Shown: positions 28,652-60,723 of the stretch, in pieces | Numbering within the stretch: the stretch's first letter is position 1 | How the letters are laid out: every line of letters starts with the position of its first letter | Source of the DNA: Hyaloraphidium curvatum SAG 235-1 | Taxonomy: Eukaryota; Fungi; Monoblepharomycota | NCBI GenBank assembly: GCA_025558095.1 | Contig: JAIVFI010000016.1 | Span: 558,001-622,000, forward strand | DNA length: 64,000 nt | Reading direction: 5' to 3' | The notes under the pieces: generated by a model | Seen by the model: only the letters and a program-made list of their open reading frames with translations | Told to the model about the DNA's origin: nothing | Database searches by the model: none | Translations under genes and position numbers: made by a program

Positions 28652-28801
28652 GCCGTCGCGGCGTTCGGGGCCACTTCGGGATGGGCCTCGTAGCTGACCT
28701 CGTGGTGGACACCCGTCGTCACGATGGCCGCGGAAGCGTGGGCCGGAGCGTGGGCCATTCCCTGGACCATTTTTGTGCTCCATGTTGTCTTCCTCTGGAT
28801 G
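28652..28801 (+). pseudogene. Remnant of the 7-TM receptor-like family (TM3-TM4 region) with an in-frame TAG
   Basis: Translates AVAAFGATSGWAS*LTSWWTPVVTMAAEAWAGAWAIPWTIFVLHVVFLWM, against AIAAHGAMSGWAAWITTFWTPIVTVAPEALAGAWVVPWTILMLHIVFFWM in the 43573-45136 gene. The TAG at 28691-28693 replaces Trp. Confidence 0.85.
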
Positions 28802-43572: not shown

Positions 43573-45136
43573 CTAGTACGACGGACAGATGCTCTCGATG
43601 GTAAAGAACAGTCCCGCGCTCCGCAGAAGGCTCCACAGGCCGATGGCCACCGTAACCATTGTCACGAAGAACGTCCTGAGCACCTGGAACGTGATGGGGA
43701 ACCCCACAAGGGTCGCCTGGAGCGACCCGACGTCCCTGTAGGCGCGCAGCAGCCTGTCCACGAGGCGGATCCGCTCTGCGCGGCGCGGGTCGGGATCCTG
43801 GCCACCTTCCCGGGCCTCCCATTCGCGCAACCGGACCTGTGCGGATTCGTACAGGTTTCCGACGCTGGAGGCCAGCCGGTTGGCGTAGGCGGAGAGGTAG
43901 GCATCGTAGAGGAAAATGCCGAGGACGGCCGCGACGCCGACGATGGTACCCACGGTGATGCACGATCCGACGGCCTGTGCCGCAAGAGTGAGCTCAGCGG
44001 GCATGCAAGCGGCCACGGATGCCACCTACCGCGACGGTGACGATGCTGAAGAAGTAAACGGCGAGCATGATCCCCCATTCTCGCGTGTGCCGGTCCCCAG
44101 CAGCGAGGCGCACCGTGGCGGCCGCGACCAGCTGGCGCCGGAGCTTGACCAGCAGCCGCACATGCGCCTCGTACTCGTCGTCTTGGGGCAGCGGTTCGCG
44201 GCAGCAATCCAAGACAGAGAAGAGGTTCGCCGCCACCGCGCGGTGGAGGAGGCGGAGGGTGGGTCGCAACCCGGCGGGGCACCGCATCATGTTTGCTAGG
44301 GCCGACAACGGCATCCAGAAAAAGACAATATGCAGCATGAGGATAGTCCAGGGAACCACCCAGGCTCCGGCCAAAGCTTCCGGCGCCACTGTCACAATGG
44401 GAGTCCAAAAGGTGGTAATCCATGCGGCCCACCCCGACATGGCACCGTGGGCCGCGATGGCCAGGGAAAGCTGCAGCGCAATTTCCGACCCGAGATTTCC
44501 CAGGCATTCGGAGCACGGGCACTCGGGGTCGTCGGGCCAGTGCTCGACGAGCACGGACGGCTTTTCCGAGTCCTCCTTATTCTCCGGGTCGCGCGATCCC
44601 AATCCTGCAAGCTGGCTCCACCGCACGAAGCCAGTGAGCTGATCACCACCGAAATTCCATGCGGTGGTGCGGTGGCCGCAGCGCATGAGCGCCCTCAGCG
44701 GTGGGGTGAGGAAGGTCAGGTAGAAGGTCGTTCCGAAGGCGACCACCTGCGGGGTGCGGAAACGCCCGTTTGATGCTGTAGCGGTGAGTGCGAGGAGTGC
44801 GCATCCCGAGCCGACGACGAGGAAGAGCTTTGTGGCGACAACAGCGCGGGGTTCCACTACGGTCCGCATGCCCCTGGAGCGCTGGAGCTGCGAGAGCCTT
44901 CGCAGGGAGGGCCACGGCGACAGGGCGCGCGAAAAAGACTCCCAATTCAGGGCGTGGGAGGTGCGGAAGTCGGCCGCGGGGTCGGAGACGCGGTCGTCGC
45001 CCTCGGGAGGCATGCCGCCCTCGCGGGCCTTGGTCGGCCAGGGAAAGAGTGCGGCCCATTCCGCGGGCTCGAAATCCTTCGGTGCGCGGCCATATATGCG
45101 GGTCGCCATTGGCAGCGCGTCAGAACCCGACGTCAT
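43573..45136 (-). CDS. 7-TM membrane protein, 7TMIC (gustatory-receptor-like/DUF3537-like) family copy 1 (intron 43975-44029)
   Basis: FEPAEW N-terminal motif, HWPDDPECPCSEC, several TM helices, and C-terminal ATLVGFPITFQVLRTFFVTMVTVAIGLWSLL...SICP. The family link is an inference. Confidence 0.7.
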
Positions 45137-46040
45137 TCGCAATGGACAGCCGAACCCAAGGAGACCAAAAGGATACGGGGCGCCGCTGACAGGCGCCGAG
45201 ATGCTCCCTTCCGCCGAACCGTCTATTCCTTTGCTGCTTATTGCATTGAGAAAGTCATGTCGTACGGTGCCTTTCAGACGGCCCGCATCGACGAACCGAC
45301 CAACCAGCAAAGGATAGTGGCGGATGGCCCACGCCGGGAGCGCCTGAATCGGGCCCGCGAGGCTTCCGCGGTGCCCACGGACCCCGACCTGGGCGACCGC
45401 GGACCCGGCTAGCAGGCCGCGCGGATCAGCCGGCTCGAGGCGGAGCTCGCGGCAGCCGAGAACGGCTGGAGGAAGCAAGGCTGGATACGGAGGAGACTGC
45501 GTGAAAGCTGATGATGCCGAATCGCGGGCCCGGAACCACGAGAAGGTGGTCCGCAAGCTGCGGATCCGCGTCGCCAACCTCGAGGCCAAGGCCGCCAACG
45601 ACGCCTCGCGGCTGGCCTCGCTGTTTGCCGAGGTGGGTCCTTCTGGACGACACTCTGGGCCTGGCCGAGGGTAGAACGGTCGGATTGTCTCCATCCTCTG
45701 CTCCGAGACGAGCGGCTTCGACCCTGCCATCGCCTGCCCGATCGTCGCAGGGGCGGACGGACGGCAGGAAATAGTCGACGAGCTTCGCAGGCGGGTCGCA
45801 GCATTTCGAGCTTGCATCAATGCAGGGGAGTGCATCAGAGTGAAGGAGAGCGAAGAACGGCGCGGGAGGGTGCGGGGATACGGATGTAACGACTATGCGA
45901 CAACAGAAGCAGCTTGCCTGGTGTTGTCGCGTCGGGACAAGCGAGGCATCAAGGGGCGCCAGCTGCTGGGAGCGGCCGGGACGGCCGGGAGACAGACGCC
46001 GATCCAAACATCGTCCCGCAACCCCGCCGAGGCACTCAAG

Positions 46041-47047
46041 ATGCCCTTCGCAGACGTCAACGGGCATCAAATTGCTTACGAAGAGCACGGACCGAAAGAT
46101 GGTCGGCCACCGCGCGGGATTCGCCCGCTTTCCGGGCTCATCGCCGCCCAGGTCCCGCCGTCATCTTCCTCCACTCGTTCCTCATGGACAGGCAGATGTT
46201 CGCGCCGCAGGTGGAAAAGCTCAAGTCCAAGTACCGCTGCATCCTGATGGACGAGCGCGGGCACGGCGAGACCCGCGCGGGGGGCAACTTCGACTTCTGG
46301 GACTCGGCGAAAGACACGGTCGGGCTGGCCAAGGCGCTCGGGATCGAGCCCGCCGCGGGCGGAAAAGGCGGGGTCGTGATCGTTGGCATCAGCCAAGGGG
46401 GTTTCGTCGCGCTGCGGTGCGCCCTCCTGGAGCCGGACCTGGTCAACGGGGCGGTTGTCATGGGCTCGTCGCCCGATGACGAGAGCGAGGAGAACAAGGT
46501 GGCCTTTGGCCAGATTTTTGCCGGATGGGAGGCCAACGGGCTCGAGAGCGTCATTGACACGGTCATGTGGGTGTCCTTGGCAGGAGACAAGGGCGTTTTC
46601 AGTGGGTGTTCTGCGGACGTCCATTGGCCTACAAATAGTCGTGGTTCACAACTGGGCCGCACAGAGGGCGACGCCGAGATGACGGGGAAGATCCGGGCGC
46701 GGATGCTCAAGCGTAACTCGGAGGACGACGCCGCGATCTTCAACGCCCTGGTTTCGAGGGACTCGATCTACGAGAAGCTGAAGGAGGTCAAGTGTCCCGT
46801 CATCGGTTGGCTCGTGCTTCTTCTCCTCCCGCGGACCATGCCGCTGACGCGCCTCCGAATAGTGCTCCACGGGACCGACGACCACTCGTACCCCGTCGAA
46901 AAGGGCAAGCGGATCTGCGAGGGGCTGCCCAAGGAGCAGCTCAAAGGCTGGGTCGAGGTGCAGGGCGGGGCGCACTTCCTGTCCATCACGGATCCGGAGG
47001 CGGTGGAGGCGCCGCTGGCCGACTTCCTCGCCAAGTACGCAAAATAG
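46041..47047 (+). CDS. Alpha/beta hydrolase (PcaD/enol-lactonase-like), spliced
   Basis: IFLHSF, DERGHG, GISQGG nucleophile elbow, HGTDD and GGAHF motifs. Confidence 0.85.
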
Positions 47048-47116
47048 ACGCGCACAGTCGCACAGATTGGATTCTTGCAGCACTCCCGTACAGCTCAAAT
47101 GACTTGGCAACTCAAA

Positions 47117-47902
47117 TCAGGGGAGCCTTCCGTCCGCCTTGAAGTCCTCCACAATCTTGTCGAACGCCTGATAGGTCAGCCGCGCCAACGTACCCCCAAC
47201 GCTGACCCTCCTGACGCCGGCAGCAGCATAGTCGGAGAGCGAGATCGCAGGATCGCTGAGCACCGAGTTCACGAGCGCGTTGATGGGCTTGTCGGTCTCC
47301 CGCACCACCCGCGCCACGTCCTCGATCTTGCGCAGCCCGGGAGCGTACAGCACGTCCGCACCTGCCTCCGAGTACGCCTTGAGCCTTTTGATCACCTCGT
47401 CCATGTCGAGAGGGTTCATGAGGAACGCCTCGCAGCGCCCGACCAGCATGACATCGTGCCCGCTGGCGACGATGGCCTCCTTCGCGGCGCGCACCCTGGC
47501 AACGGCGTCGGCCAGTGGCAGCATCTTCTTGTTCGCGGCATCCTCGATCGACAGGCCCGCAACGCCCGTCTCCACGCACAGCGCGACGTTCTTAGCGACG
47601 CCTTCGGGCGTGTCGGCGAACCCGGCCTCGAAGTCGGCGTTCACGGGCAGGTCCGTCGCCGCGACCAGCAGCCTCAGGTGGTCGAGCACTTCCTCCAGAG
47701 ACATCTCGCCGTCGCTGCGCCCCAGCGCCATCGCGGCGCCGGATGAGGTCGATGCGAGGGCCTTGAAGCCGGCCTTGGCCAGGCGGACCGCCGAGCCCCC
47801 GTCCCACGGGTTGGGGATCGCGAAGCAGCCGGAGGCATGCAGCGCGCGGAATGCGGCGCGTCGGGACGCGATGGAGGCGGAGGACGGCGCAGCGGGTGGC
47901 AT
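47117..47902 (-). CDS. Isocitrate lyase/PEP-mutase family enzyme, intronless
   Basis: IPNPWDGGSA, ALASTSSG, VNADFEAGF, GLSIED, AGADVLYAPG and GVRRVSVGG motifs. Confidence 0.88.
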   Translation of the reverse strand: MPPAAPSSASIASRRAAFRALHASGCFAIPNPWDGGSAVRLAKAGFKALASTSSGAAMALGRSDGEMSLEEVLDHLRLLVAATDLPVNADFEAGFADTPEGVAKNVALCVETGVAGLSIEDAANKKMLPLADAVARVRAAKEAIVASGHDVMLVGRCEAFLMNPLDMDEVIKRLKAYSEAGADVLYAPGLRKIEDVARVVRETDKPINALVNSVLSDPAISLSDYAAAGVRRVSVGGTLARLTYQAFDKIVEDFKADGRLP

Positions 47903-48135
47903 TCTCAACGCTCCGAAGGTCGAAAAGCTAGAAGTCCGAAGTCTGAGCTCGACAGGACTGCTCCACCAGAACGAATAATCGCGGAATCTCCGTTGGGCTC
48001 TGAGAGGTCGGCAAAGCGCGCTCGCCGGAACGCGCCTTCAACGCGTCTTTCCCGGCGTGGAGTCGCGCTTGTAGCGCCGTTTGTTGATCTAAGCGATCCT
48101 GCGTTCCGTGGCCCGGAGAAGCGGGGAGGTTGGCG

Positions 48136-48723
48136 ATGGTGGAGCTCAAGGTCGGCGATACGGTTCCCGACTTTGAGCTCCAGGACCAGGACGGGAAGGC
48201 CGTGAAGCTGAGCGACTTCAAGGGCCGGCCTCTCGTCGTGTTCTTCTACCCGAAAGCCAACACTTTCGGCTGCACTCGCGAGGCGTGCAGCTTCCGCGAC
48301 AACATCGGCCTCTTCCCGGCGGGAACCGCGGTCGTGGGGGTCAGCTCCGACACGCCAGAGGCGCAGAGGGCATTTGCGGACGCGTACAACCTCGGATTCC
48401 CCCTGCTCGCGGACGTGGGCGGCGCGCTGCGGGCCAAATGGGGCGGTAAGACATCTGGACGTCCGCTCCTCAGCGTTTCATCGTTTGACTGCCCTTCTGT
48501 CTTCCCTGCTACCATCGCAGTGCCGAACTCGATGATGGGACTCAGTGAGTTACTTGCTGCAAAGTTGGCCTTGATTGCTCCAACTCGGCAACCATCTCCA
48601 GCTCCCGGCCGAGTCACCTACGTGATCGACAAGGACTTCGTCGTTCGCTCCATTTACAACTCGGGCATGGCGTATTGGGCCCACGTTACGGAGGCTGCCA
48701 AGGCCGTCAAGGCGCTTGCCTAG
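48136..48723 (+). CDS. Peroxiredoxin, BCP/PrxQ type (introns 48446-48520 and 48545-48601)
   Basis: FFYPKANTFGCTREACSFRD and PGRVTYVID motifs. Confidence 0.9.
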   Translation: MVELKVGDTVPDFELQDQDGKAVKLSDFKGRPLVVFFYPKANTFGCTREACSFRDNIGLFPAGTAVVGVSSDTPEAQRAFADAYNLGFPLLADVGGALRAKWGGKTSGRPLLSVSSFDCPSVFPATIAVPNSMMGLSELLAAKLALIAPTRQPSPAPGRVTYVIDKDFVVRSIYNSGMAYWAHVTEAAKAVKALA

Positions 48724-48749
48724 TTTTGAAGGTTTTGAAGACGTTTCAT

Positions 48750-49670
48750 CTACTCGGCACCTTCACTCTCGTAGTCCACTCCCTCCTTCCACGCATACTC
48801 ACGCACAAGTTCGTCCAACCCGCTCAATCCGAGCCACTCTACATACTTGCCGAGGATCGGCCCCGCGGTCGACTGGAATGCCCCGAGCTCATTCACATGA
48901 GGGAAAGGTTCGTCCGGTTCGGGCTTCCCCAAGAAGCGGCACAAAGGGCCCCAGCCTTCGGAGGGGCGGAAGACGAGCAGGTTCTCGCGGGGCACGGTGG
49001 CCTTGACGTGCTCGACATAGTGTCGGTGGTATTCGATCGCTCGGGACTGGAATCGGTTGTCAGCCTGGCACTGCCACGCGGGCAACCGCATCGACCATGC
49101 CTTGCTGAACTTGCCACCTTCATTGAGCTGGAACATCTGGCCGAGGTGCAGCCCTGCGTGGTCCACGGCAGTCAGCTCGTGGTCCGGGACCTTCTTCCAC
49201 GAGTCATCCTGCATTCTGAACAAATTGATGAAGGCGACGCCTTGGGAGTACGAGTTCCACCACTTCTCCATGTCGTCGCGGACGGTCAGGACGACCTTGG
49301 CATCTGGCACCTGGGCGAAAATCTCGTCGAAGGAGTAGTTGATGTCGACCAGAGCGTCGTAGTGGCGTCCAAACTCCGCCTCAAAGTCGACGTGCTTCCC
49401 ATTCAGGGCATCGATGAGGAGGCGGCATCCGTGCGGGTACATTTGGCTTCGGATCGAGGGTGCCCGTGGCACGATGCGGTCAGAAAGGAATCGTGCCAAC
49501 GGAAGCAGACAGACGTCTAACCCGACTTCACCGACCCCTTCCAAGATTGTTCCTCGGAAGTATACCGCCGTTAGTGAATGGCAGGGGCGCAGGCCAAGTT
49601 TCTCAAGGGCGACGTGGAGCGATAGAGTCCCCGTCCTGTGCATCCCGGCACCGAGGACCGTGATCGGCAT
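48750..49670 (-). CDS. Sulfotransferase-like P-loop protein (Sulfotransfer_4 type), one in-frame intron
   Basis: VLGAGMHRTGTLSL, PDAKVVLTVRD and EGWGPLCRFLGKPEPDEPFPHVN motifs. Confidence 0.85.
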   Translation of the reverse strand: MPITVLGAGMHRTGTLSLHVALEKLGLRPCHSLTAVYFRGTILEGVGEVGLDVCLLPLARFLSDRIVPRAPSIRSQMYPHGCRLLIDALNGKHVDFEAEFGRHYDALVDINYSFDEIFAQVPDAKVVLTVRDDMEKWWNSYSQGVAFINLFRMQDDSWKKVPDHELTAVDHAGLHLGQMFQLNEGGKFSKAWSMRLPAWQCQADNRFQSRAIEYHRHYVEHVKATVPRENLLVFRPSEGWGPLCRFLGKPEPDEPFPHVNELGAFQSTAGPILGKYVEWLGLSGLDELVREYAWKEGVDYESEGAE

Positions 49671-49827
49671 ATCAAATCCAAGGAGAAGAAGCGCCACCGA
49701 TTTCGGTCGACTCTGGTCAAAACGACAGGAATAGAGCGTGTGGGAGACAGCTCGGGCATCGAAACTTCGATCGCGAAGAATTGCGCCAGTGACGGCGTTT
49801 CGTCGCCGTTTCCCCCTTCACGCCGAG

Positions 49828-51351
49828 ATGCTGTCACCCGATGGCAGCAAGGAGGCGCAGAACGGACACGCCGAGGGCACCTTCTCGCTGCCGCCCCGGA
49901 TTTCGTTCTCGCCGGCCGAGTGGCTCGCGGCGGTGCCGAGCGCGGCCCCCTGGCCGGACGAGCTCTCCCATTTTGCGGGCAGTGCCGACCCCGCGGCCGA
50001 ACTCCGGGCCTCGTCGCCCCTGACCCCTGCCGCGATGCTTCGGGAGCTGGAAGGGACGGGCGTGGCGCGCTTCCTCGTGCAGGGGCAGTTCGCCGCAGCT
50101 CCGCTTGCGCGCTGGGTGGCTCTCCGGAGCCTTTTTCTTCACGGCATGGTGCCCACGTACGCTGTGGGCCCCTTTGTGCTGGGCGGGAACCTGTTTTCCG
50201 AGCGTGCATTGGTGGGAGGCACCGTGGCCCTCGTACTTGCCTATCCGATTTCGACGACCGCATTCCTCCTTTATTCCTCCTTCTACAACGACATCCGTCG
50301 TCCTGCGACTGCGGCGGGTCCCGCGAGCTCTGAACTAAGCCGACATTCGCTGGCCGGGGTCGTGCGCTGGTTGCAGCTCGTGCGCAGAGGGGAAGCGACC
50401 GCGGAGCTGCTTGACCACTCGGATTCCGACCCTCTGTGCCCCTGTTGCATGTGTGCCGGCTCGGTGGCTACAAAGGCCGGCTCGCTCCATCTCGCGGAGA
50501 TTCTGATCCGAACCCTGTCCGTGTTCTTCTGTCATGTCCTCATCGGTTGGACCTCGGTCGTGACGTTTGCAAACGCGTATTTCTCGACCTGGTGGGGCCC
50601 ACTACAGCTCGTGACCTCGGCTATCGCTTGCGTCCTCTTCATCGGTGTCAATAACCTCCTGCGCTATCCGGGGAACGTGGCCTCGTTGGATCTTTCGCGG
50701 CGAATCGTACGCCGCGCCGTAATGCTCTCGCTGCGCAACCTGCTGGCAAGGTACCAGGCGGTCTTGCACGCTCCTGACGGCATGGACACATCGGATCTGG
50801 TTTCCTCGGGGCAGGAACCATACCAGCAGCTCCACACTGCAATCGCTGCGAGCTGGCGGACGCGCTATAGCATCTTTGTTGGGGTCACACCCGGATTCCT
50901 GGTGTTTACTCTGTCGGTGTTGCTCTTTGGTGCCATACCGAACATCGTCGGTGGCATGTGCATCCCACTGTGGATAGTCATCGGCTTTGTCATCCTCATC
51001 GTCTTGTTCTCCCTGACGGATCTGGTCAACCTGAGCATTTCGAACGACCAGATCGAGGATGTCGTGCAGCTCTACTCTTCCGCGCGTCGCCAGATCCGCG
51101 AGCTCGTGGTGACAACTCGCACCACCGATCCCGCGAAGCGCGAAGCGGTGCAGGCGCTGGTCGCCCATTCCGAGCTGCTGGACAGCTACCTCGAGATCCG
51201 TTCCATCAAGGCCAAGGTGTTCGGGTTCGAGGTCAGCTTCGGGATGGTGCGCAACGTGGTGGTGAGCGGGGCCACGGTGCTGATCGCGCTCTGGACGGTG
51301 CTGCGCGCGGCAGGGGTGACGTTTACCATGCAGACCGTGTGCCCGGTGTGA
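49828..51351 (+). CDS. 7-TM membrane protein, 7TMIC-like family copy 2, intronless
   Basis: FSPAEW, HSDSDPLCPCCMC, seven hydrophobic segments, and C-terminal LLDSYLE...AKVFGFEVSFGMVRNVVVSGATVLIALWTVL...TVCP. Confidence 0.75.
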   Translation: MLSPDGSKEAQNGHAEGTFSLPPRISFSPAEWLAAVPSAAPWPDELSHFAGSADPAAELRASSPLTPAAMLRELEGTGVARFLVQGQFAAAPLARWVALRSLFLHGMVPTYAVGPFVLGGNLFSERALVGGTVALVLAYPISTTAFLLYSSFYNDIRRPATAAGPASSELSRHSLAGVVRWLQLVRRGEATAELLDHSDSDPLCPCCMCAGSVATKAGSLHLAEILIRTLSVFFCHVLIGWTSVVTFANAYFSTWWGPLQLVTSAIACVLFIGVNNLLRYPGNVASLDLSRRIVRRAVMLSLRNLLARYQAVLHAPDGMDTSDLVSSGQEPYQQLHTAIAASWRTRYSIFVGVTPGFLVFTLSVLLFGAIPNIVGGMCIPLWIVIGFVILIVLFSLTDLVNLSISNDQIEDVVQLYSSARRQIRELVVTTRTTDPAKREAVQALVAHSELLDSYLEIRSIKAKVFGFEVSFGMVRNVVVSGATVLIALWTVLRAAGVTFTMQTVCPV

Positions 51352-51805
51352 TTTGCAAAGCGAATCGCTGGTTCTTTGGCGAGTCACCGTACGTGATTGA
51401 ACAAAGTTCTGAGGCGCTCGGTCAATCTCGTTCGTTGCCCGCCGCTCGCCATCGGAATCTGACGATGTCAGCCTCTCTCATTCACGGTCCACTGAGATAC
51501 AAGCTCGAGACGTTGCCCGTCCTTCCTCGCGAGCCTTGTGGCGTTTTGCCACCCAGCTGCTAGCGAGTGACTCGCCGAGACCGCCCGCGCAACACCGCGT
51601 TTAGCCGCGTTTCTCCCTCGCCGTCTGCCGACAGAAATCGGGCCGTTTTCGGCGGGAGGCCGGAGTTCGCCGGACGCTCAGCGCTTTGCCGGCGACCGGA
51701 GCGGCCTCCGCGCCCTGTCGCCGGCCCGGTTAGGGTGGGAACCGCCCTTCGGGCCCGGCGATGCCGGGTGGTCCGGAGGAGCCTGCGGCTCCTCAAGCCT
51801 CGGAA

Positions 51806-53682
51806 ATGGGGAATATCGGGCATTCCCAGTCGGTTGTCGATGTTTTGGACCAGGTTTCCGAGAAGGGAGGGGCGGGAGACGTCGGGGACGCGGGGAAACC
51901 TGCGGCGCTGACGAGTGAGGACGGCGAGACCGGCTTCGCGGCCTCCCCGTCTCTGCCGTCGCCGCGACCCATAACGGACGCTGTTGGCGTTGGCGTTCCG
52001 GACGGCGAGGAGCCGGAAGCCGAGGGGCGCCCCGCTGCGGAGGCGGATGCGGACGAGCCGGGCGCGTCGCTGTCGCCGAAATCCGCCGGGCCGCCCTCCA
52101 CCGAAAGCGACGCCGTGACTCTGGACCATCCTACCGGCGAACCGTCCGGCGAACCGCCGGATCCGGCAGCCGGCGGTCCGCCCGACAAGGCCGCCCTCGA
52201 GATCGAGGATCCCTCCGGCAAGCCCGCCGCCGACCCTCGCTTCAAGGGCCTGGCGGCCGACACCCACGAGTACCCCGAGGGCGGCTTCGGCTGGTTCGTC
52301 GTCCTCGGCGCCTTCCTCATCCATTTCGCCGGCATCTCCCTCATCTACATCACCGGCGTCTTCATCCGCCTCTTCTTCTACGAGGACGTCTTCCCCGGCG
52401 CGACGTTTGCCCAGCTGTCGTGGATCAGCGCCGCCATCGGGCTGTGCCTACCCGTGCTCGGCCCGGTGTACGGCTTCGCGATCCCGCGGCTCGGCCCGCG
52501 CGTGGTCTGCGTGTCGGGCGCGCTGGTCCTCGCCCTGGGCTTCGAGCTGGCCAGCCTCGCGCAGACCACGTGGCAGATCGTGCTCACCCTCGGTCTGCTC
52601 ACGGGGATCGGCCAGGCGACCTTCTACATCTCGGCCGTGTCGACGCTGGTGCAGTGGTTTTCGCGCAGGAGGGGGCTGGCCATGGGAATCGTCGCCTCGG
52701 GGACGGGGCTGGGGGCGCTGACCCTCGCGCCGCTGGCGCAGGCGCTGATCGACGCGCTGGGGTGGCGGAGCGCGCTGCGCGTGCTGGGGCTGATCACGGG
52801 GACGCTGCTGGTCACGGGTGGGATGCTGCTGAAGACGAGGATGGGGACGTACGTCGATCTGCGGTTCTGGAGGAAGAAGGAGGAGCCCGCGGCCGACGAG
52901 GCGGGGGCACCGAAGAAGGAGGAGGCCAAGAAGCCGCCGTTCATCGACCGCAACTTCTTCAAGAACGCCAACTACGTGCGGCTGTACATATTCGCCTTCA
53001 TTCAGCCGTGGGTTCGGTCTCGTTAGTGTTGCTCAGTCAAGCTGACGTTCTGCATTTCCAGATTCGCCTTCCTTTTTCCCTACACTTACGTGCCCTCGTA
53101 CGCGGTCAACATCGGCCTCTCGGCCTCCACTGGCGCCCTCGCGCTCGCCCTCATGAACGCCGCCTCGTCGCTGGGCCGGATCGGCGTCGGCTACGCCGCG
53201 GACCGGTTCCTGGGTCAGATCAACTCATACGTTCTTTGCCTCCTGCTGCCACCCATCTTCTGCCTCACGCTGTGGACGACGTGCCATTCCATGGCGCAGC
53301 TATTTGCGTTTGCCGTGCTGTTTGGGTTCTTTGCCGGCGGATTCGTGGGTGGTCGCTCGCCTTTGTGCGCCAAGCTTGGAAGCTAATGGATGTTCCGCAG
53401 ATCGTCGCGTACCCGATCGTGCTGGCGCAGATCTTCGGCCCCGAGAACCTGGCCTCCCGTCTCGGCTTCCAGCAGACCGCGGGGCTGGTTGGCCAGCTTT
53501 GCGGGCCGATCATCGTCGCCACCATTCTCGACAAGAACACCCACCCGGAGGCGGACGGCAGCGTGTGGATCAACTACGTGCCTATGATCTGTTACCTCGC
53601 TGGAATGATGTTGCTGAACGTATCCATCATTGCCTGGGTGAGAATGGATATCACGAGGTGGAAGCTCTGGGTCAAGGTGTGA
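51806..53682 (+). CDS. MFS monocarboxylate-transporter-like (MCH/MCT) protein, spliced
   Basis: PEGGFGWFVV, QWFSRRRGLAMGIVASGTGLG, GWRSALR and GRIGVGYAADRF motifs. Confidence 0.88.
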
Positions 53683-53859
53683 CGGGTTGGGGTAGATCTG
53701 CTAGAGCTCTGAGAGACATAGAGCGATAGATGAAGTAGAGCTGTCCGATCGAAGCCATGATGGGAGGAGACGCCGAGGACGGGCGGTTCGGGCGGCAGAA
53801 GGGGGTTTCGGCGGCGGAGGCGGGGTCTGGCGGCCGCCACCGACACCTCACTCCCCAAA

Positions 53860-56738
53860 ATGACTGGCAAGGACAGGGACGACGACGCGGCGTCGGAGGA
53901 CGGCGCTGCGAAGGGCAAGCGCAAGGTCGCCTGCGTGCCTTGTGCCCAGCGGCGGAGGCGGTGCGACGCGGGGAAGCCCGCGTGCGACCGCTGCATCGAG
54001 ACGGGGGATGGGCCGGACTGCCACTATCCCGAGGGCGGCGGCCCGAAGCGCAAGCGGCTGCGGCGCGGGCTGTCGTGTGCGAGCTGCCATTCGGGGAAGA
54101 AGTCGTGCGACGGCAATTCGCCGTGCGGGCGCTGCGTGGAACGGGGCATCGCCGCCGCGTGCCGGCCGCGCGACGAGGACGCGGTTTCCGAACGGCCGGT
54201 TCGCGCGCAGCGCCCCGTCGCGCCGAGGAGCGAGGCCGGCGACCCCGGCTCGCCGTGGGACGGCAGGCAGCCCGGGTATGCCCTGCCGATCCCGCAGCCC
54301 CCGATGGCGGCCCCTCTGCCGGCAACCTACCCGCCTCCCTGGCTGCCTTTCGACGCTCCAATGATGGCAGGCGGATTTCAGGGCATGCAGGGACCGGTCG
54401 GGGCACACGGTATCGTGCCGAACGCGCTCGACAGGCTGCCGGCCCTGGCGCCGCCGGGGATCCCAGCCTTTGCCCCGCAGGCGGCCTGGACGCCGGCGTT
54501 CGCGGCGTTCCCGGACTCCATGGGCTCCATGGGCTTCCCAGGTATCATGGGTTCCATGTCGCCGTCGCCAATGCCGATGTCGGGCCTGTCTGCGCTGGCC
54601 TTTGCTGCCGCCCCGGAGCGGCTTCCGGCCCCGCCGTCGCCGATCCTGCAGCTGCCCGCCGAATATGCCGCGACCCTCTATCCCACCCTGCCTCCCGGCC
54701 TCCTCCCTCCTCCGCTCGTGCTCTTCCGCGCGGTCGACAACTTCTTCCAATATGGCGCGCAGAACCTGCTGCACCGCGCGACCTTCGACGCCCGCGTCTG
54801 CCGGGGCGAGTCTGCGGCCCGCGCCGCCTACCGCGCACGGTTCCGCACGCGACTGGTGGCCCTGTCCAGGGGCACTGCGCGTCCCGCGGGGAAGCTGGTG
54901 CCGGAGCTGCGCCCGAGCGGAGCGCTGGAGGAGAACATGGACGCCGCGCTGCTCGTCTCGGTCCTCTGGGGCGGGGCCAAGCTCGGGGCGCGGCTCGCAT
55001 CCGAGGGCAAGCGGGATGCCGACACCGGCATGGCGCCGGCGGCCATCGACGCGCTCGAGGGGTGGCTGCTGGACGAGATCGACGAGGTGTCGGCGTGGTT
55101 CGCGGCCGTGGGCGGGTCCACCGGGTCCGGGCTGGAAGTGCTTTGGCAGGAGATTTCGAACGGCTGGGGCAGCAGCTTTGCGGCCTCCACCCCGAACGCG
55201 GTGCAAAACAGCCCGCTGGGGTCGCCCAAGTCGGGCACGGCGGGCTCGCTGTCGCCGCCGCCCGCGCCATTCTCCTCGGCCGACCTGCCCCTTGCCGACC
55301 GCGAGGCGCACGAGCTCTTCATGTCGAGCTACCACCGCGACATCTTTGACGCCGTCATCGCCCTCTTCCACACTGGCTGGACCTACCAGTTCATGGGCAA
55401 CGGAAACGAATTCCGCAACGTGCTCGGGACCATTGCCCTGCGCGTCCTGCCCATGTGCCGGTTAGAGGAATGGTTTGCCAGGGGGCCGGACGACCGGCAC
55501 GATCCGCCGCCGGTGTGGATCCGCGCCGAGGAGAAGCTCAGGCTGGTTGCGCTCCTGCGGACGGGCATGTCGCTGTACGTGGAGCTCCGGAGCGGGCCCC
55601 AGTACGTCTCGAGCCCCGACGTCGTGCCGGCCGGGGACTTCGACTACGTGGTGCTCATCGTCGCCAGCACGCGCCGCCTGGCCAACCTGGAAATGCCCTG
55701 CAACGACCTCACGTTCGACAACCTGCCTTCGGCCGTCTGCGCTTTCCCCGGGCGGGATCCGCCGGTGCCCGTCACCTACGCGGGGCACATCGACATCGGC
55801 GTCGGGCGTCGCCTGACTCACGGCGACGCGTCGTGGTGGATGGAGATGACCCTCGGCTCGCCCCAGCGCCATTCGGCCCTCGCGTCCTCCTTCGGCCGCG
55901 TGCTCGCGCTGGGCCCCTACACCTTCCTCACCCTGGTAGGCGAGCTCATGTTCCGGCACATTGCGCTGCGCAACTGGCTCCACGGCCACTCCCTCGAGCC
56001 GCACGACCTCGACCGCGATCGCACCGACGTGCCCCCGGCCGTCCTGGCGGAAGCACGCGCCCGCCGCGCCGCCTTCCTCGCCCTGCTCTCGGACGCCGAA
56101 TCGCACCTCCCCTCCCCGCTCCGCGAGGCCTACGAGTCCGGCGACGGCAACGCCGTGCGCGCGCTGGCCGCGCGGCACTACGGCGAGCGGCACTGCGGCC
56201 GCCTCACCGCCTACCTCGCCTGGATCCACGTGCTCCACATCCTCGTGCGCAGCCCGGGCGACGTCGCGGGCTCCTTGGTACACCCGGACGAGCGGTGGCT
56301 CCGCGGGCCCGAGTTCCTCGAGTGCTCCGCGCACGCCATCGCCGTGTCGAGGCTGACGAAAGCCATCATGGAGGTGGCCGAGGACTCGGTCAGGGTGCCG
56401 CAGCTGCTGCCCTTTGCCGTGCTCCGCGCGGGGTTCGTCCACGCGATGGTGCTGCGCAGGCTGGGGGCGGGAGGGGGGCCGGTGGGACCCGAGGGGGACG
56501 AGGTGGTCAAGAGGCTGGTGGAGAGCACGGCGGCGTGCCTGGACGCGCTCAAGATCGGCGGGTCGGGGTGGTGGGTTGCCCGGTGCGGCGCGTTTCGTGC
56601 TCTCTCCTAACCTCGCTGGCGTTGGACAGGTCCTACACGAAGCAGGCGTACCGGATCTTTGAGAAGATCGTGCTACACGGGCTCGTTCCGACGGAGGAAG
56701 ATCTGGAGGCGCTCCGGGCGGGGCGGACGGTCCGGTGA
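53860..56738 (+). CDS. Zn2Cys6 transcription factor with two binuclear clusters (intron at about 56570-56629)
   Basis: ACVPCAQRRRRCDAGKPACDRCIETGDGPDC and SCASCHSGKKSCDGNSPCGRCVERGIAAAC, followed by a FFQY...LLHRATF middle region. Confidence 0.85.
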
Positions 56739-56829
56739 TGTCGCCAAGGGCTGGCAAATAAACTTCTTTGGGCACGCATCCCCTCGTGCGACGGGCCGCT
56801 GACGATCCGCCCCAGTGCTCCTCACGTCT

Positions 56830-56975
56830 CGCCGGACACACCGTCCCCAGGACCAGTACGACCCCGTGCCCCTCAGCACCGTCCACAATCCCGCGCCAGC
56901 GTGAACAGGTTGACGACCACCGCGCGCACCGCGCCGCGATCGATCGGAAACCCGAGGATCTTTTGTTGGTTGCCC
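56830..56975 (-). pseudogene. Frameshifted C-terminal (TM7) remnant of the 7-TM receptor-like family
   Basis: Three frames join as NQQKILGFPIDRGAVRAVVVNLFTLA / GLWTVLRG / GVVLVLGTVCPA, matching the C-terminus of copies 1 and 2. Confidence 0.8.
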
Positions 56976-57362
56976 GCGAACTGTCTGCGAGACTTGGGAA
57001 ATCGAGGTTCAAAAGAGGATTGATCCTTCCTGGAGACAGATCCAGTGGATTGCTCTCATCCTTGGTCGGTTGGTTTATTGGATCTTGGAGCGGTCGTTCT
57101 GCGCGAGGTGATCCGACAGACGAAGACATGGAGGTGCTTTAGCCGCGGGGACGTGGAGCACTGGATCACAAGCTGGCAGATGGATTTTCCAATGCGATTT
57201 TCTTTGGACTCGAGAGCCTTTAGATCCTTCTGGCCCGCCGCAGTCGAAGGTGCGCTTGACAGGTTCGGTCGGCTCCGGCGGCTTCGGTCGAGCCGACTAC
57301 TACACTCGCGTCCCCGCAAACTTCGTGTTTCCGTCACGTCGTGCCCGTGAAACGCGTCGAAA

Positions 57363-58643
57363 ATGAAGGCCGCGCTGCTGGTCGAGAACGGGAAGCCGCT
57401 CGTGCTCCGCGATGACCTCGCGACGCCGGAGCCGACAGGCACGCAAGTCCTCGTCGAGACGACGTTCTGCGGCGTCTGCCACAGCGGTGGGTCGTCTTTC
57501 GCCCCATTCGATGTGCTTTTCTGACCGATCGCAAATGCGCTCCTGCCGGAACGACGTGCTTTTCTGGCGAAACGCTTCCAGATTTGCACATCTGGGAAGG
57601 AAAGTACGACCTCGGCGGCGGGAAGGTCCTGGACATGCAAGGCCGCGGGTTGAAGCTCCCTCTTGCCATGGGCCATGAGGTCGTGGGCCGCGTCGCGAAG
57701 CTCGGCCCGGACGCCAAGGGCGTCGAGGTCGGAGCCGAGTACCTGGTCTACCCTTGGGTCGGCTGCGACAACTGCGCGCTCTGCCGCGCCGGGAGCAGCA
57801 ACATGTGCCTGACCCCTCGCTCCATCGGCGTCTACGCCGGCGGCGGGTACGCGACCCACGTGATCGTGCCGAATCCGAGCGTGCTGCTGCCAATCCCGGC
57901 CAACGTCGACAAGGCGGTCGCCGCGACGTACGCGTGCTCGGGGGTAACGGTCTACTCGGCGATCAGCAAAGTGAAGCCGCTGCTCACGGATCCGGAGGAG
58001 CCGCTCGTCCTTGTGGGGGCCGGCGGGCTGGGGCTCAATGCAGTCAGCCTGCTGCAGGCGCTGGGGCACAAGTACACGGTCGTTATGGACATTGACGAAG
58101 GGAGGCTGAAGACGGCGGAGAAGGCGGGGGCGAAAAAGACGGTCGACGGCCGCGGATCGGCAGAGGAGGTCGTCAAGAGGATCGTTGAGGCATGCGGCGG
58201 CACAGCTCCCGTGGCAATCATAGGTCCGTTTCTTTGAGCGCTAGCTTGTCGACGACCTAACCATGTTGGTTTGCAGATCTCGTCAACTCGTCGGCCACTG
58301 CGCAGGCGGCGTTCCTCGCCCTTCGCAAAGGCGGCAAGCTGGTCCAGGTCGGCCTGTTTGGCGGATCGCTCGAGCTGCCGTTGCCGCTGATGCCGATCAG
58401 GGCCTTGACCATCCAAGGTGTGTCTTTCGTCCATCGATTGTTTGCTTCGCTGAGCTTTGGGTCGCGTTCGCAGGTTCCTACGTCGGCAACCTGAAGGAGC
58501 TCAAGGAGCTCCTGGATCTCGCTGCCAAGGGCGGCGTCCAGCCGCTGCCGGTGGTTACGATGAAACATCCGGAGGAGGCGAACGAGGCACTGGAGAAGCT
58601 CAAGTCCGGAGGCGTCACGGGGCGGATAGTGCTCAAGGCGTGA
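57363..58643 (+). CDS. Zinc-dependent alcohol dehydrogenase, spliced
   Basis: CGVCHS|D, MGHEVVG, CDNCALC...C, YACSGVT, GAGGLG and GSYVG motifs. Confidence 0.9.
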
Positions 58644-58705
58644 TCACATCCATTCCCCACCCCCTTTTCTGTACAGTCTCTCTGTCTACCGAAAAACAAA
58701 GCTCT

Positions 58706-59098
58706 TCAGACCTTCATCGCGTCGGCCGCCCACTTCGTGAACAGCGCGGCGTCAAAGTACTCTTCTCCGACCAGGATCCTGTCGCCGGCCTCGTTCAGCG
58801 AGCACACCAGGGCAATGTCCACCTCTGCTTTGGCCCCATTCTTGGCCTCCAGCGTCATCACGTGCTGCAGCACGAACCCGTTGTCCAGCTCCCTGATCCG
58901 CGGGTTCGCAAACAGCACCGATTTGGTTGCGCCCGAGAGCCACTTAATTCCGGCGATGTTCTCCTCCAGGTTCTGCCACTTGCGGTCGCTGCAGTGCCAA
59001 ATCTTCACGTCGGGGTCGTAGACGGACGAGCGCACCGCCTCGACGTCGCCGGATTCGATGGCGGCGATGAATCGCTTCGCGACTTCGGTCGGGCTCAT
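58706..59098 (-). CDS. SnoaL/NTF2-like protein, intronless
   Basis: RFIAAIESGDVEAV..Y.PDVKIWH...GFVLQH...EEYFD pattern. Confidence 0.8.
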   Translation of the reverse strand: MSPTEVAKRFIAAIESGDVEAVRSSVYDPDVKIWHCSDRKWQNLEENIAGIKWLSGATKSVLFANPRIRELDNGFVLQHVMTLEAKNGAKAEVDIALVCSLNEAGDRILVGEEYFDAALFTKWAADAMKV

Positions 59099-59517
59099 TG
59101 GCGACGCGTTCGCGCGAACACGGGACTCCTCCGCTCGTTCAAGCTCGTGCGTCTTTCCCGCAAAGTAGGGAGGGCAACGCTTCTATCGAGGTTGCGGGCC
59201 GGGAGTGTTGGCTGCGGGGAAAGTGTGGCGGGTGGGAGACAGACTCACGGCCGGGTCCAGTCAGCAATCAGCTCCTTGCCGTTTCGTGTCGACTCGTCTG
59301 TCCATCAGCATCAAGGACAAGATCAATGGAAATAAAGGGCCGACCTGCGCCCTCGCCCACCCATGGGCACCTTCCTGCGCACCGCTTACAAGAGCAGAGC
59401 GCTTCCCGCTCGCAGCCGGTGGGTTCCGCGATTCAAAAGACAATATCGGTGGGTTCCATGCGATGTGATCAATCATGTTCGAACTCTGATACACTCCAAT
59501 ACGATCGCGGCTAGCGC

Positions 59518-60723
59518 CTAAACGGATGGACAGAAGCTCTCGACCGTGAAGAATATGCCCAGGCCCCTCAACACGCTCCACAGCCCGACGCAGAGCGTCA
59601 CCAGAGTCACCAGCAACCCCCTGGCGGTTCCGTACGTCACCTCGAACCCCAGAACCCTCCCCCGCAACTCCGACACCTCAAGGAACGACGCCAGCACGGC
59701 TTCGTGCCGCCTCAAGGGCCCGGAGGGGTCGTTGGCGGTGAGCACGCGGATCTCGCGGAGGGCGTCGTGGTACAGGGCAACGACGGAGGGGATGGCCGCG
59801 TTGCGGGCGGGGAGGTTGAATATGTTCACGAACATGTAGACGAGGTAGAGGAGGAAGGTGATGGTGTACCAAGCGAGAATGCACCGGCCGGTTGACTGCA
59901 GAGGAGGGCGGTGAGCTGGAATACCACAAGGCGGTCGAGGCCTGGCCAGAAGCACGTACAATAGTAGGGATGGCGCATAGAAAAAGGAAGGGGAAAACGG
60001 TGAATATGATGAGCTGGCTGGCAAATGCAAGGTCCTGGTTCGCGCGTGCTTTCCATTGTCGCATCAGCAGGTAATGCAGGCGGACACAGAGCTCCGAGGA
60101 TGCGACTGGCTGCACGACCACAGGCTCGGCATGCGGTTTCATATCGGCATCCTTGTTCAGTGCGTGCCGTAGCGCGATGCGCATAGTTTGCCTCTGTAGA
60201 CGTTCCTCCAGCCCATAGTACGCCATGTTGCCAATCGCAGGCATCCTTCCGAATACCAAGAAAACGTTGTATAGCACTTTGACGGCAACCCATGCGGCAA
60301 AGAGGAGTCAGCCCCACCACGCAGAGAAGAGGCGCGGAGCGAAAGTTGCGCACGTCGTGTAGCAAATCAACAGCTCGGACGTGAGCGCAGGAGCCAAATA
60401 TGCAATTGCTGCACTTCGCGCCCTACGCGTCACGACCAACTCGCTAACGATGTGGCCTGCGAGTGAGGGAAGCTGAGGTCCTGAAAATTGTGCGCCAACC
60501 GGCCCCGATCGTGTCCGTGACCGGGGCCGGCGGGGTCCTCAGCCGTGCGGCCGCTGCGCGCCTCGGCGTCGGTGAAGCAGTCGAGAGGCGGCGGCGGCGT
60601 CGGGAATAGCACCGTCCACTCCGCAGGCGTGAAATCGTCCGGGAGGCTCTTCCCCGCGTCTGCGGCCCCGTCTTCCATCTCGACCGCAGACGCGTCTCGC
60701 ACATCAAGGAGATTGTCGGCCAT
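59518..60723 (-). pseudogene. 7-TM receptor-like family copy 3, with internal deletion and nonsense codon (intron 59896-59959)
   Basis: The N-terminus FTPAEW...EDPAG runs to a stop at 60430. The TM1-2/Cys region is missing, there is an in-frame TGA at 60308-60310 (FSAWWG*LLF), and the C-terminus GRVLGFEVTYGTARGLLVTLVTLCVGLWSVL...SFCP is intact. Confidence 0.75.

What the first reader, a model, noticed from the sequence alone, without database searches (positions are those of the whole stretch)
43573..60723. Candidate fungal chemoreceptor-like (7TMIC/GR-like) family undergoing birth-and-death
Seen in sequence: related proteins at 43573-45136 (-), 49828-51351 (+) and 59518-60723 (-), plus two remnants. 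They share F.PAEW...DPA at the N-terminus, about 7 hydrophobic helices, a long loop between TM4 and TM5, a short loop between TM5 and TM6, an N..I/V..LY..A...I/LR extension after TM6, and a split last helix (L..YL/FL...A/G.V.GF.V/I......V/F.T.....LW.VL). Established knowledge: a cytoplasmic N-terminus, long second intracellular loop and TM7a/TM7b broken at a G-F-x-I/V motif are hallmarks of insect odorant/gustatory receptors, plant DUF3537 and related 7TM ion channels. Inference: a lineage-expanded ligand-gated channel/chemosensor repertoire in an early-diverging fungus. Five copies in about 32 kb, three of them dead, is the turnover pattern typical of receptor families.
Basis: partly seen in the sequence, partly recalled or inferred. 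Interest (0 to 1): 0.9.

Follow-up and report, generated by a model that had tools for sequence, protein, structure and literature searches.

The report
Huge insect-chemoreceptor-fold family in a chytrid
The three genes belong to a family of about 180 or more seven-helix membrane proteins in the non-flagellated chytrid fungus Hyaloraphidium curvatum whose predicted fold is closest to insect smell and taste receptor channels, which would be by far the largest such repertoire reported outside animals; what they do is untested.

Summary
The window is from Hyaloraphidium curvatum, a monoblepharid chytrid.

**Copies in the window**
- Copy 2 (49828-51351, +) is an intact, intronless gene of 507 aa.
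- Copy 1 (43573-45136, -) is also intact. Its frame change is a 55-nt GT..AG phase-0 intron.
- Copy 3 (59518-60723, -) is a pseudogene. It has lost TM1-TM2 and the Cys loop and carries a frameshift.
- Two short remnants are real: 28601-28807 (+) and 56856-56974 (-).

**Family size.** Five capped genome searches found about 180 distinct places. A profile search found 460 protein representatives. All 12 public relatives sampled for a name are from H. curvatum.

The other published fold criteria are met:
- seven TM helices;
- N-terminus inside;
- long inner and short outer loops;
- extended TM4-6;
- split TM7, with TM7b the most conserved helix.

**Limits.** The GR TM7 motif is not kept. Channel function, tetramer formation and expression are untested. 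Verdict: a new, very large 7TMIC-fold family.

The parts
44030..45136 (-). Copy 1, exon 1 (369 codons): N-terminus, TM1-TM5
   Evidence: Profile match to positions 11-346, E 1.5e-34. The open frame ends at a GT donor. The nearest paralogs, 46% and 41% identical, are on contigs 7 and 6.
43975..44029 (-). Copy 1 intron, 55 nt, phase 0, GT..AG
   Evidence: Read directly from the sequence. Splicing joins ..SIVTVA to AVGSCITVG.., which restores the family's A.GSC motif. Other paralogs split at the same profile position. The annotated protein P0056 also does.
43573..43974 (-). Copy 1, exon 2 (133 codons plus stop): EL3, TM6, TM7a, TM7b, C-tail
   Evidence: Profile match to positions 355-497, E 1.1e-37. 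It is 32% identical to copy 2 over 131 aa, E 1e-19.
49828..51351 (+). Copy 2: intact intronless gene, 507 aa
   Evidence: Single ORF. Profile E 2.5e-171. The identical 507-aa protein is on record in the protein collection as P0001. AlphaFold2 model: pLDDT 87.6, pTM 0.88.
59518..59895 (-). Copy 3, last exon (EL3 to C-tail), still an open frame
   Evidence: Profile match to positions 368-497, E 5.9e-40. It is 63% identical to P0056 and 37% identical to copy 1 exon 2.
59896..59959 (-). Copy 3 intron, 64 nt, GTACGT..CTCAC..CAG, phase 0
   Evidence: Read from the sequence. It sits at the same codon position as the copy 1 intron.
59960..60307 (-). Copy 3, middle piece (TM4 to TM5)
   Evidence: Profile match to positions 255-367, E 1.2e-10. 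It is 38% identical to P0056.
60308..60723 (-). Copy 3, broken 5' part
   Evidence: It holds the N-terminal F.PAEW piece (60553-60660) and a TM3/EL2 piece in another frame (60311-60460), which ends in a TGA at 60308-60310. Profile positions 43-203 have no counterpart: only 92 nt lie where about 480 are expected. The locus is therefore a pseudogene lacking TM1, TM2 and the Cys loop.
56856..56974 (-). Remnant B: decayed TM7a/TM7b fragment with a frameshift
   Evidence: Two adjacent frames match profile positions 449-475 (E 3.7e-5) and 475-488. The translations read ..KILGFPIDRGAVRAVVV.. and ..GLWTVLRGTG...
28601..28807 (+). Remnant A: decayed fragment of a copy-1-like gene (TM3-EL2-TM4) with an in-frame stop
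   Evidence: 62% identical to copy 1 residues 224-276, E 1e-13. 64% identical over 36 aa, E 1e-15. The stop codon is seen.

Best explanation
The three loci are members of a very large gene family that, as far as could be seen, is restricted to the chytrid Hyaloraphidium curvatum. About 180 places were seen directly, and the true number is probably 300 or more.

**Architecture (from the models and alignments).** The proteins are about 500 aa long and have the architecture of the 7TMIC superfamily (insect Or/Gr/Orco, animal GRL, plant DUF3537, PHTF):
- N-terminus in the cytoplasm and seven TM helices;
- short outer loops;
- TM4, TM5 and TM6 prolonged into the cytoplasm;
- a last helix split into a cytoplasmic TM7a and a membrane TM7b.

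**Mechanism (inferred, not shown).** By analogy with Or/Gr channels, I infer three things:
- subunits assemble through the cytoplasmic helix bundle into tetramers;
- the strongly conserved TM7b lines a central pore;
- the highly variable TM1-TM6 bundle forms a ligand pocket that differs from paralog to paralog.

The cell would then have a broad set of ligand-gated channels for sensing chemicals in the water.

**Family-specific additions.**
- A nearly invariant H-x3-D-x2-C-x-C-x(2-5)-C cluster lies in the cytoplasmic TM2-TM3 loop. It may be a metal-binding knuckle.
- One nearly invariant Cys lies in the TM5-TM6 outer loop and another in the extracellular C-tail. They may form a disulfide.

**State of the window copies.** Two copies are intact (copy 1 with one short intron, copy 2 without). 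One is a pseudogene and two are small relics.
For: **Family real and large**
- 82-91 matches in each of four genome searches capped at 81-87 scored candidates, with 680-882 first-look candidates. A fifth search, with copy 1 exon 1, gave 20 matches from 111 scored of 300.
- My union of the five searches is about 180 distinct places. Each new query added 16-45 unseen ones.
- The exhaustive profile search found 460 representatives at E<=1e-3 and 292 at E<=1e-30.
- All 12 public relatives sampled for a name are H. curvatum hypothetical proteins.
- Nearly all scored loci are open frames of 480-600 aa.

**Fold**
- Model of copy 2: pLDDT 87.6, pTM 0.88. Model of a 31%-identical paralog with 119 sequences: pLDDT 91.6, pTM 0.90.
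- In all-against-48,161 scans, the top 8 and top 7 rows are all insect OR/GR chains.
  - 295-346 residues are aligned, covering nearly the whole target.
  - The next rows are partial helical bundles of about 140 residues.
- Foldseek's best rows are also Gr9, Gr64a, OR28 and OR10, with probability 0.97-1.0.

**Topology**
- Mean K+R across 119 paralogs is 6.6-9.5 in the N-terminus, IL1, IL2 and IL3. It is 0.1-1.1 in EL1-3 and the C-tail.
- Inner loops are 68-76 aa and outer loops 10-22 aa.

**Conservation pattern as in Or/Gr**
- TM7b has entropy 1.76, against 2.8-3.2 for TM1-TM6.

**Weak independent lead**
- The protein-language-model neighbours include DUF3537 (0.90) and 7tm_7 clusters (0.86).
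- An Atlas fold hit to a cnidarian cluster has TM 0.56/0.69 over 362 residues.
Against: - No sequence-level link to any 7TMIC family. There are no Pfam hits at E<=10 for 28 members, and no OR/GR among PDB sequence hits with the profile.
- Foldseek E-values are weak (8e-3 and worse). Its TM-scores are only 0.3-0.41, and rmsd is 5-6 A in the VIA alignments.
- Both models come from the same predictor, whose training data may have included Orco.
- The GR TM7 motif is kept at 1-2 of 4 positions at best.
- The tetramer prediction gave no answer.
- No expression data could be obtained.
- The first language-model neighbour is Tmp39, not a 7TMIC.
- H. curvatum has no known swimming stage (PMC8371127). 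Chemotaxis, the obvious use for a chemoreceptor repertoire in a chytrid, does not apply.
Confidence: 0.65

Rival explanations
1. The proteins do have the 7TMIC fold and are distant homologs, but they are not ligand-gated chemosensory channels. They would do something else in membranes, for example act as constitutive channels, scaffolds, or surface recognition or defence molecules. The high diversity would then come from conflict with parasites or viruses, or from self/non-self recognition, rather than from ligand tuning.
For: - The function of most non-insect 7TMICs (PHTF, DUF3537, unicellular GRLs) is unknown (PMC9998090).
- The organism is non-flagellated, so it cannot steer towards a stimulus.
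- The family has features absent from Or/Gr: a conserved cytoplasmic H/D/C3 cluster and a pair of extracellular Cys.
- The variable part includes all of TM1-TM6 and not only a pocket.
Against: - The conservation profile is the one seen in Or/Gr channels: TM7b best conserved, the rest of the bundle free to vary.
- Hundreds of intact, divergent paralogs is the pattern of receptor repertoires.
- Non-motile cells also sense nutrients and toxins.
Confidence: 0.2
2. The resemblance to Or/Gr is convergent or partly a modelling artefact. The family would be a lineage-specific seven-helix membrane protein of another origin, such as an orphan transporter or a structural membrane protein. Its helices happen to be placed in an Orco-like way by AlphaFold2.
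For: - No sequence similarity to any 7TMIC.
- Foldseek TM-scores are below 0.5 and E-values above 1e-3.
- The literature itself leaves homology versus convergence open for distant 7TMICs (PMC9998090).
Against: - Every OR/GR/Orco entry ranks above every other protein in three scans with two models.
- The alignments run in order over all seven helices and nearly the whole target chain.
- Topology, loop lengths, the long TM4-6 and the split TM7 all agree independently.
Confidence: 0.15

Closest known systems
Insect odorant receptors, Orco and gustatory receptors (Pfam 7tm_6, 7tm_7; structures 6C70, 7LIC, 8V02, 8JM9, 8VC1)
   Same: - Seven TM helices, N-terminus inside, short outer loops, long TM4-6, and TM7 split into 7a and 7b.
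- TM7b is the most conserved helix.
- Repertoire size in the hundreds, and dispersed genes with some tandem pairs.
   Different: - No detectable sequence similarity and no Pfam hit.
- TM7 motif not kept.
- About 70 extra N-terminal residues.
- A 60-70 aa TM2-TM3 loop with an H/D/C3 cluster.
- Conserved Cys in EL3 and in the C-tail.
- Most genes are intronless. The one recurrent intron lies before TM6, not before TM7.
- Found in a fungus.
Unicellular-eukaryote GRLs, including the chytrid Spizellomyces punctatus and S. palustris GRL1 (Benton et al. 2020, PMC7746228)
   Same: - Chytrid fungi.
- 7TM with N-terminus inside and long inner loops.
- TM7 motif almost lost; Spizellomyces keeps 1 of 4 positions.
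   Different: - Those are single-copy genes found by sequence similarity to GRL/DUF3537.
- This family has about 180 or more copies and no such sequence similarity.
- I could not compare the two directly, because no Spizellomyces sequence was available through the tools.
PHTF-like Class-B 7TMICs and other cryptic 7TMICs found only by structure (Benton and Himmel 2023, PMC9998090; Himmel et al. 2023, bioRxiv 2023.08.30.555482)
   Same: - Recognised by fold only.
- Class-B proteins also have an enlarged TM2-TM3 intracellular loop.
   Different: - As I recall, PHTFs are one- or two-copy conserved genes.
- Here there are hundreds of fast-diverging paralogs in one species, and IL1 is only about 70 aa.
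- Class assignment (A or B) was not tested.
Plant DUF3537 proteins (PF12056)
   Same: 7TMIC topology. A language-model neighbour at score 0.90.
   Different: Small families of 4-12 genes. No hmmscan hit of any member to PF12056.

Membership tests
7TMIC superfamily (fold-defined; criteria of Benton and Himmel 2023, PMC9998090) | Seven transmembrane helices | tested here: met
   Both AlphaFold2 models show the same helices. In copy 2 numbering they are TM1 79-118, TM2 125-161, TM3 213-239, TM4 256-278, TM5 353-376, TM6 381-405 (the helix runs on to 429) and TM7b 471-494. The hydropathy peaks agree.
7TMIC superfamily (fold-defined; criteria of Benton and Himmel 2023, PMC9998090) | Intracellular N-terminus | tested here: met
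   Positive-inside rule over 119 paralogs. Mean K+R is 6.6-9.5 in the N-terminus, IL1, IL2 and IL3, against 0.1-1.1 in EL1-3 and the C-tail. This is a prediction only. DeepTMHMM was not available.
7TMIC superfamily (fold-defined; criteria of Benton and Himmel 2023, PMC9998090) | Intracellular loops longer than extracellular loops | tested here: met
   Median lengths are IL1 72, IL2 76 and IL3 68 aa, against EL1 16, EL2 22 and EL3 10 aa, with generous loop borders.
[not shown]
   - The top 8 and top 7 of 48,161 chains are all OR/GR.
7TMIC superfamily (fold-defined; criteria of Benton and Himmel 2023, PMC9998090) | TM4-TM6 projecting into the cytoplasm (anchor domain) and TM7 split into TM7a and TM7b | tested here: met
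   Secondary-structure elements of the model:
- helix 256-278 continued by 284-313 (TM4);
- 331-346 plus 353-376 (TM5);
- 381-429 (TM6, 49 residues);
- 435-460 (TM7a), a turn at G466, then 471-494 (TM7b).

The second model is the same. The 3-D packing was judged only through the alignments to OR/GR, not by eye.
7TMIC superfamily (fold-defined; criteria of Benton and Himmel 2023, PMC9998090) | Assembly into tetramers with a central pore; ligand-gated cation conductance | tested here: inconclusive
   Complex prediction with four copies of residues 276-507 gave 'no answer'. The chain itself did not fold in that tool, with pLDDT under 50. Conductance cannot be tested with these tools.
Animal Gr/GRL family (sequence-defined; Pfam 7tm_7, Trehalose_recp, 7tm_6) and plant DUF3537 | Match to the family profile | tested here: not met
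   No member of 28 scanned hits PF08395, PF06151, PF02949 or PF12056, even at E<=10. The family profile finds no OR/GR among PDB sequences.
Animal Gr/GRL family (sequence-defined; Pfam 7tm_7, Trehalose_recp, 7tm_6) and plant DUF3537 | TM7 motif (T/S)Yhhhhh(Q/K/E)(F/L/M) | tested here: not met
   The TM7b consensus is R-T-x-x-V-T-x-x-T-V-x-V-G-L-W-S-x-L-R. At best T483 or T480/L488 fit, that is 1-2 of 4 positions. The source calls the motif diagnostic but not definitive (PMC7746228).
Animal Gr/GRL family (sequence-defined; Pfam 7tm_7, Trehalose_recp, 7tm_6) and plant DUF3537 | Conserved intron just before the exon that encodes TM7 | tested here: not met
   Most members are single open frames. 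The one recurrent intron lies at profile position about 366, before EL3 and TM6.

The most novel reading that the evidence does not exclude
A non-swimming planktonic chytrid carries several hundred functional ligand-gated ion channels of the insect Or/Gr type. This would be an independent, insect-scale expansion of the 7TMIC fold in Fungi, used for chemical sensing of the water column. The family would also have its own cytoplasmic metal-binding knuckle and an extracellular disulfide. Large chemoreceptor repertoires of this channel type would then not be an animal invention. It would also give a simple microbial system in which to study how the fold is tuned.
Probability: 0.35. Interest if true: 0.85.

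Novelty: new variant of a known kind. Interest (0 to 1): 0.72.

Why it matters
**What was known.** Outside animals and plants, 7TMICs had been found as single genes or small sets. Two Spizellomyces chytrids have one each, and Thecamonas and Vitrella have six each (PMC7746228). Plants have 4-12 DUF3537 genes. A later structural screen added thousands of 7TMICs from archaea, bacteria and unicellular eukaryotes (bioRxiv 2023.08.30.555482).

**What is new.** I found no report of a 7TMIC expansion in any fungus, and none on this family. A family of about 180 to 450 members in a 32-Mb fungal genome would be on the scale of insect Or/Gr repertoires, as I recall them. It would be one of the largest gene families of this organism.

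**Why it would matter if the fold assignment holds.**
- Massive diversification of this channel fold would have happened independently in Fungi.
- It raises the question of what a non-flagellated cell senses with it.
- It offers hundreds of natural variants with one conserved pore helix for structure-function work.
- The added Cys/His cluster and the extracellular Cys pair are testable family-specific features.

Tried and rejected
- **Pfam:** scans of copy 2, the pieces of copies 1 and 3, and 28 paralogs at E up to 10 gave nothing relevant.
- **PDB sequence searches:** nothing relevant with copy 2 or with the family profile.
- **The search for homologous proteins:** with the protein and with the alignment it returned only 3 proteins, because the word filter was saturated. 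It says nothing about other taxa.
- **Complex prediction:** four copies of residues 276-507 gave 'no answer', neither support nor evidence against. The alignment was not used and the chain did not fold.
- **The look-up of sequencing runs:** I did not try another route.
- **The fetch from genomes:** A planned unbiased sample of 1.2 Mb to estimate copy density could not be taken.
- **The look-up of encoding contigs for P0056:** not on record, because records of the window's own genome are left out.
- **Tmp39 (TMEM39):** it was the first language-model neighbour at 0.93. I rejected it because no member hits PF10271 and no such fold appears in the scans.
- **Transposon-borne gene:** rejected. Paralogs are 23-57% identical at protein level, and the window copies lie among ordinary metabolic genes.
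- **Joined protein of copy 1:** Its exons were analysed separately by reference.

Full report
**1. What is in the window**

The region is GC-rich, about 61-71%, and gene-dense. Named relatives of the family identify the organism as Hyaloraphidium curvatum. The window also holds a fungal Zn2Cys6 regulator. H. curvatum is an atypical non-flagellated fungus placed in the Monoblepharidomycota (PMC8371127).

I ran a profile built from 28 paralogs over the six-frame translation of the window.
- Copy 2 is one open frame at 49828-51351 (+), 507 aa, E 2.5e-171. The identical protein is on record in the protein collection as P0001.
- Copy 1 (-) comes as two pieces in different frames.
- Copy 3 (-) comes as four pieces.
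- Remnant B is a small fragment at 56856-56974 (-).
- Remnant A is a weak hit near 28700 (+).

**2. State of each copy**

*Copy 1 is intact.*
- The frame change lies at a textbook short intron at 43975-44029: 55 nt, GT..AG, phase 0.
- Removing it joins ..SIVTVA to AVGSCITVG.., which restores the family's A.GSC motif.
- I did not build the joined protein.

*Copy 3 is a pseudogene.*
- It has an intron at the same codon position, 59896-59959 (64 nt, GTACGT..CTCAC..CAG).
- At least six other paralogs split at the same profile position, about 366.
- So does the annotated 492-aa protein P0056 on contig 2. This backs the intron reading without RNA data.
- Its lesions lie further upstream. Profile positions 43-203 (TM1, TM2, Cys loop) are missing: only 92 nt lie where about 480 are expected.
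- The TM3/EL2 piece ends in a TGA, and the reading then continues in another frame.
- Its last exon is still 63% identical to P0056.

*The remnants are real.*
- Remnant A (28601-28807, +) is 62-64% identical to copy 1 residues 224-276 and holds a stop.
- Remnant B (56856-56974, -) reads ..KILGFPIDRGAVRAVVV.. and, one frame over..GLWTVLRGTG... This is the family's TM7a/TM7b junction.

The window therefore holds two live genes, one pseudogene and two relics.

**3. Size and spread of the family**

- Four genome searches are capped at 81-87 scored candidates out of 680-882 first-look candidates. Each returned 82-91 matches, the weakest full-length ones still at about E 1e-20 or better. A fifth search, with copy 1 exon 1, gave 20 matches from 111 scored of 300.
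- Counting places by hand over the five searches gives about 180 distinct loci on most contigs. Each new query added 16-45 unseen loci, so the count is far from saturation.
- A rough capture-recapture from the first two samples (100 and 79 loci, 34 shared) gives about 230.
- The exhaustive profile search of 1.84 billion representatives gives 460 proteins at E<=1e-3 and 292 at E<=1e-30.
- All 12 public relatives I sampled for a name are H. curvatum 'hypothetical protein'. Hits below rank 150 could not be inspected, so relatives in other species are not excluded.
- Paralogs are old. Median pairwise identity is 27%, and the median to the nearest listed paralog is 38%.
- Only a handful of scored loci carry in-frame stops.
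- Young duplicates exist. An inverted pair on contig 20 is 73% identical in the first exon and 93-94% in the last.
- Small clusters occur on contigs 6, 9, 12, 22, 26 and 43.
- The three window copies are at most 37% identical to each other over the parts compared. Their nearest relatives are on contigs 32, 7/6 and 2.

**4. What the protein looks like**

Sequence methods find no known family.

*Models*
- AlphaFold2 with the 28-paralog alignment gives a confident model of copy 2: pLDDT 87.6, pTM 0.88.
- A second model, of a paralog 31% identical to copy 2 with 119 sequences, is better: pLDDT 91.6, pTM 0.90.

*Helices (copy 2 numbering)*
- A soluble N-terminal part of about 75 residues.
- TM1 and TM2, then a 60-70 aa loop with a short helix and the Cys cluster.
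- TM3, a short outer loop, then TM4 running on as a 30-residue helix.
- A return helix into TM5, then a 4-residue outer loop.
- A 49-residue TM6 helix.
- A 26-residue helix (TM7a), a turn at the invariant G466, and a final 24-residue TM7b.

*Topology*
- Across 119 paralogs the N-terminus and the TM2-3, TM4-5 and TM6-7 connections carry 6.6-9.5 Lys+Arg on average.
- The other loops and the C-tail carry 0.1-1.1.
- The N-terminus is therefore inside and the C-terminus outside.

**5. Fold comparison**

- *Foldseek against the PDB:* the best rows are BmGr9, Gr64a, Gr43a, OR28 and OR10 with probability 0.97-1.0. The E-values are weak (8e-3 and 6.5e-2) and TM-scores are 0.3-0.41.
- *Scan independent of Foldseek (48,161 chains):* the eight best chains for model 1 and the seven best for model 2 are all insect odorant or gustatory receptors.
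  - 295-346 residues are aligned, spanning model residues about 62-507 and nearly the entire target.
- *Published yardstick:*
  - Their PHTFs scored 11.8-12.9 and unrelated 7TM controls 2-4 (PMC9998090).
  - This family meets each of those criteria.
- *Weak, partly independent leads:* an ESM Atlas fold hit to a cnidarian cluster has TM 0.56/0.69 over 362 residues. Language-model neighbours include DUF3537 (0.90) and 7tm_7 clusters (0.86), but the first is Tmp39 at 0.93.

**6. Conservation**

- TM7b is by far the best conserved helix, with entropy 1.76 against 2.8-3.2 for TM1-TM6. As I recall, the pore-lining TM7b is likewise the most conserved part of Or/Gr channels.
- Nearly invariant residues fall into four groups:
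  - H197, D201, C204, C206 and C209 in the cytoplasmic TM2-3 loop;
  - R292 and R296 on the TM4 extension, W343, and N406 on TM6;
  - G466, R475 and T483 at the TM7a/TM7b junction and in TM7b;
  - C378 (outer TM5-6 loop) and C505 (outer C-tail).
- I infer that the H/D/C3 cluster binds a metal and that C378 and C505 form a disulfide.
- The GR motif (T/S)Yhhhhh(Q/K/E)(F/L/M) is not kept: 1-2 of 4 positions fit. Spizellomyces GRL1 keeps 1 of 4.

**7. Interpretation**

- *Most likely (about 0.65 for the reading as a whole; I put the fold assignment alone nearer 0.8):* a new sequence-orphan branch of the 7TMIC superfamily that expanded enormously in the Hyaloraphidium lineage.
- *How it works is inferred from Or/Gr structures, not shown here:* tetramers held by the TM4-7a bundle, a pore lined by TM7b, and a variable ligand pocket in TM1-6.
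- I put the full chemosensory-channel reading at about 0.35.
- *Rivals:*
  - the same fold with another role (0.2);
  - convergence or a model artefact (0.15).
- I do not file the family under the sequence-defined Gr/GRL or DUF3537 families. The profile match, the TM7 motif and the 3' intron were each tested and not met.

**8. Novelty**

- Fungal 7TMICs on record are single genes in two Spizellomyces species (PMC7746228). A later screen also mentions Chytridiomycota and Blastocladiomycota.
- No paper in the library links Hyaloraphidium with such a family.
- An earlier first-stage note of this scan (s1-705335) proposed the same idea for six genes on another piece of this genome. It was unchecked. 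The genome-wide results here cover it in general terms.

**9. Limits**

- No RNA evidence was obtained.
- No unbiased genome census was possible.
- There is no view of the weaker 310 profile hits.
- There is no direct comparison with Spizellomyces GRL1 or with PHTF models.
- The tetramer test gave no answer.

Noticed in passing
window 43975-44029 and 59896-59959; G000:C2:133356-133401, C12:731865-731920, C37:36924-36964, C20:564747-564772, C7:67843-67955: A subfamily shares one short phase-0 intron just before the A.GSC motif (EL3), at profile position about 366. Most family members are intronless. [quoted passage not shown]
   Followed up: partly
G000:C20:619914-623582: Two family members lie head to head, 73% identical in exon 1 and 93-94% in the last exon. 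This is a young inverted duplication, perhaps with gene conversion of the 3' exon. It is the best place for a selection test.
   Followed up: no
copy 2 residues 194-211 (window about 50407-50460) and residues 378 and 505: A nearly invariant L-x2-H-x3-D-x2-C-P-C-x(2-5)-C-A-G cluster lies in the cytoplasmic TM2-TM3 loop. There is also one conserved Cys in the TM5-TM6 outer loop and one in the extracellular tail. Possible metal site and disulfide, not known from insect Or/Gr as far as I recall.
   Followed up: partly
window 41435-43453 (+): A 672-aa ORF has a long Ser/Thr/Arg-rich low-complexity N-terminal half (repeats such as SSRTASS) and a structured-looking C-terminal half. It has no Pfam hit. 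A long antisense ORF overlaps it, as expected at this GC content.
   Followed up: no
window 25814-28267 (-): An 817-aa ORF with many hydrophobic stretches lies next to remnant A. It was not searched.
   Followed up: no
window 60430-62151 (-): The listed 573-aa ORF is a chimera of reading frames. Its start is a short-chain dehydrogenase (adh_short, E 3e-15). Its last ~100 codons (from the M at 60723) are the N-terminus of copy 3. The middle is probably intergenic or intronic sequence that happens to stay open in this GC-rich DNA.
   Followed up: partly
window 45914-59098: The family members sit among ordinary metabolic and regulatory genes: alpha/beta hydrolase, PEP mutase family, peroxiredoxin, sulfotransferase, MFS transporter, Zn2Cys6 regulator and zinc alcohol dehydrogenase. 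The window is therefore not a pure receptor array.
   Followed up: yes
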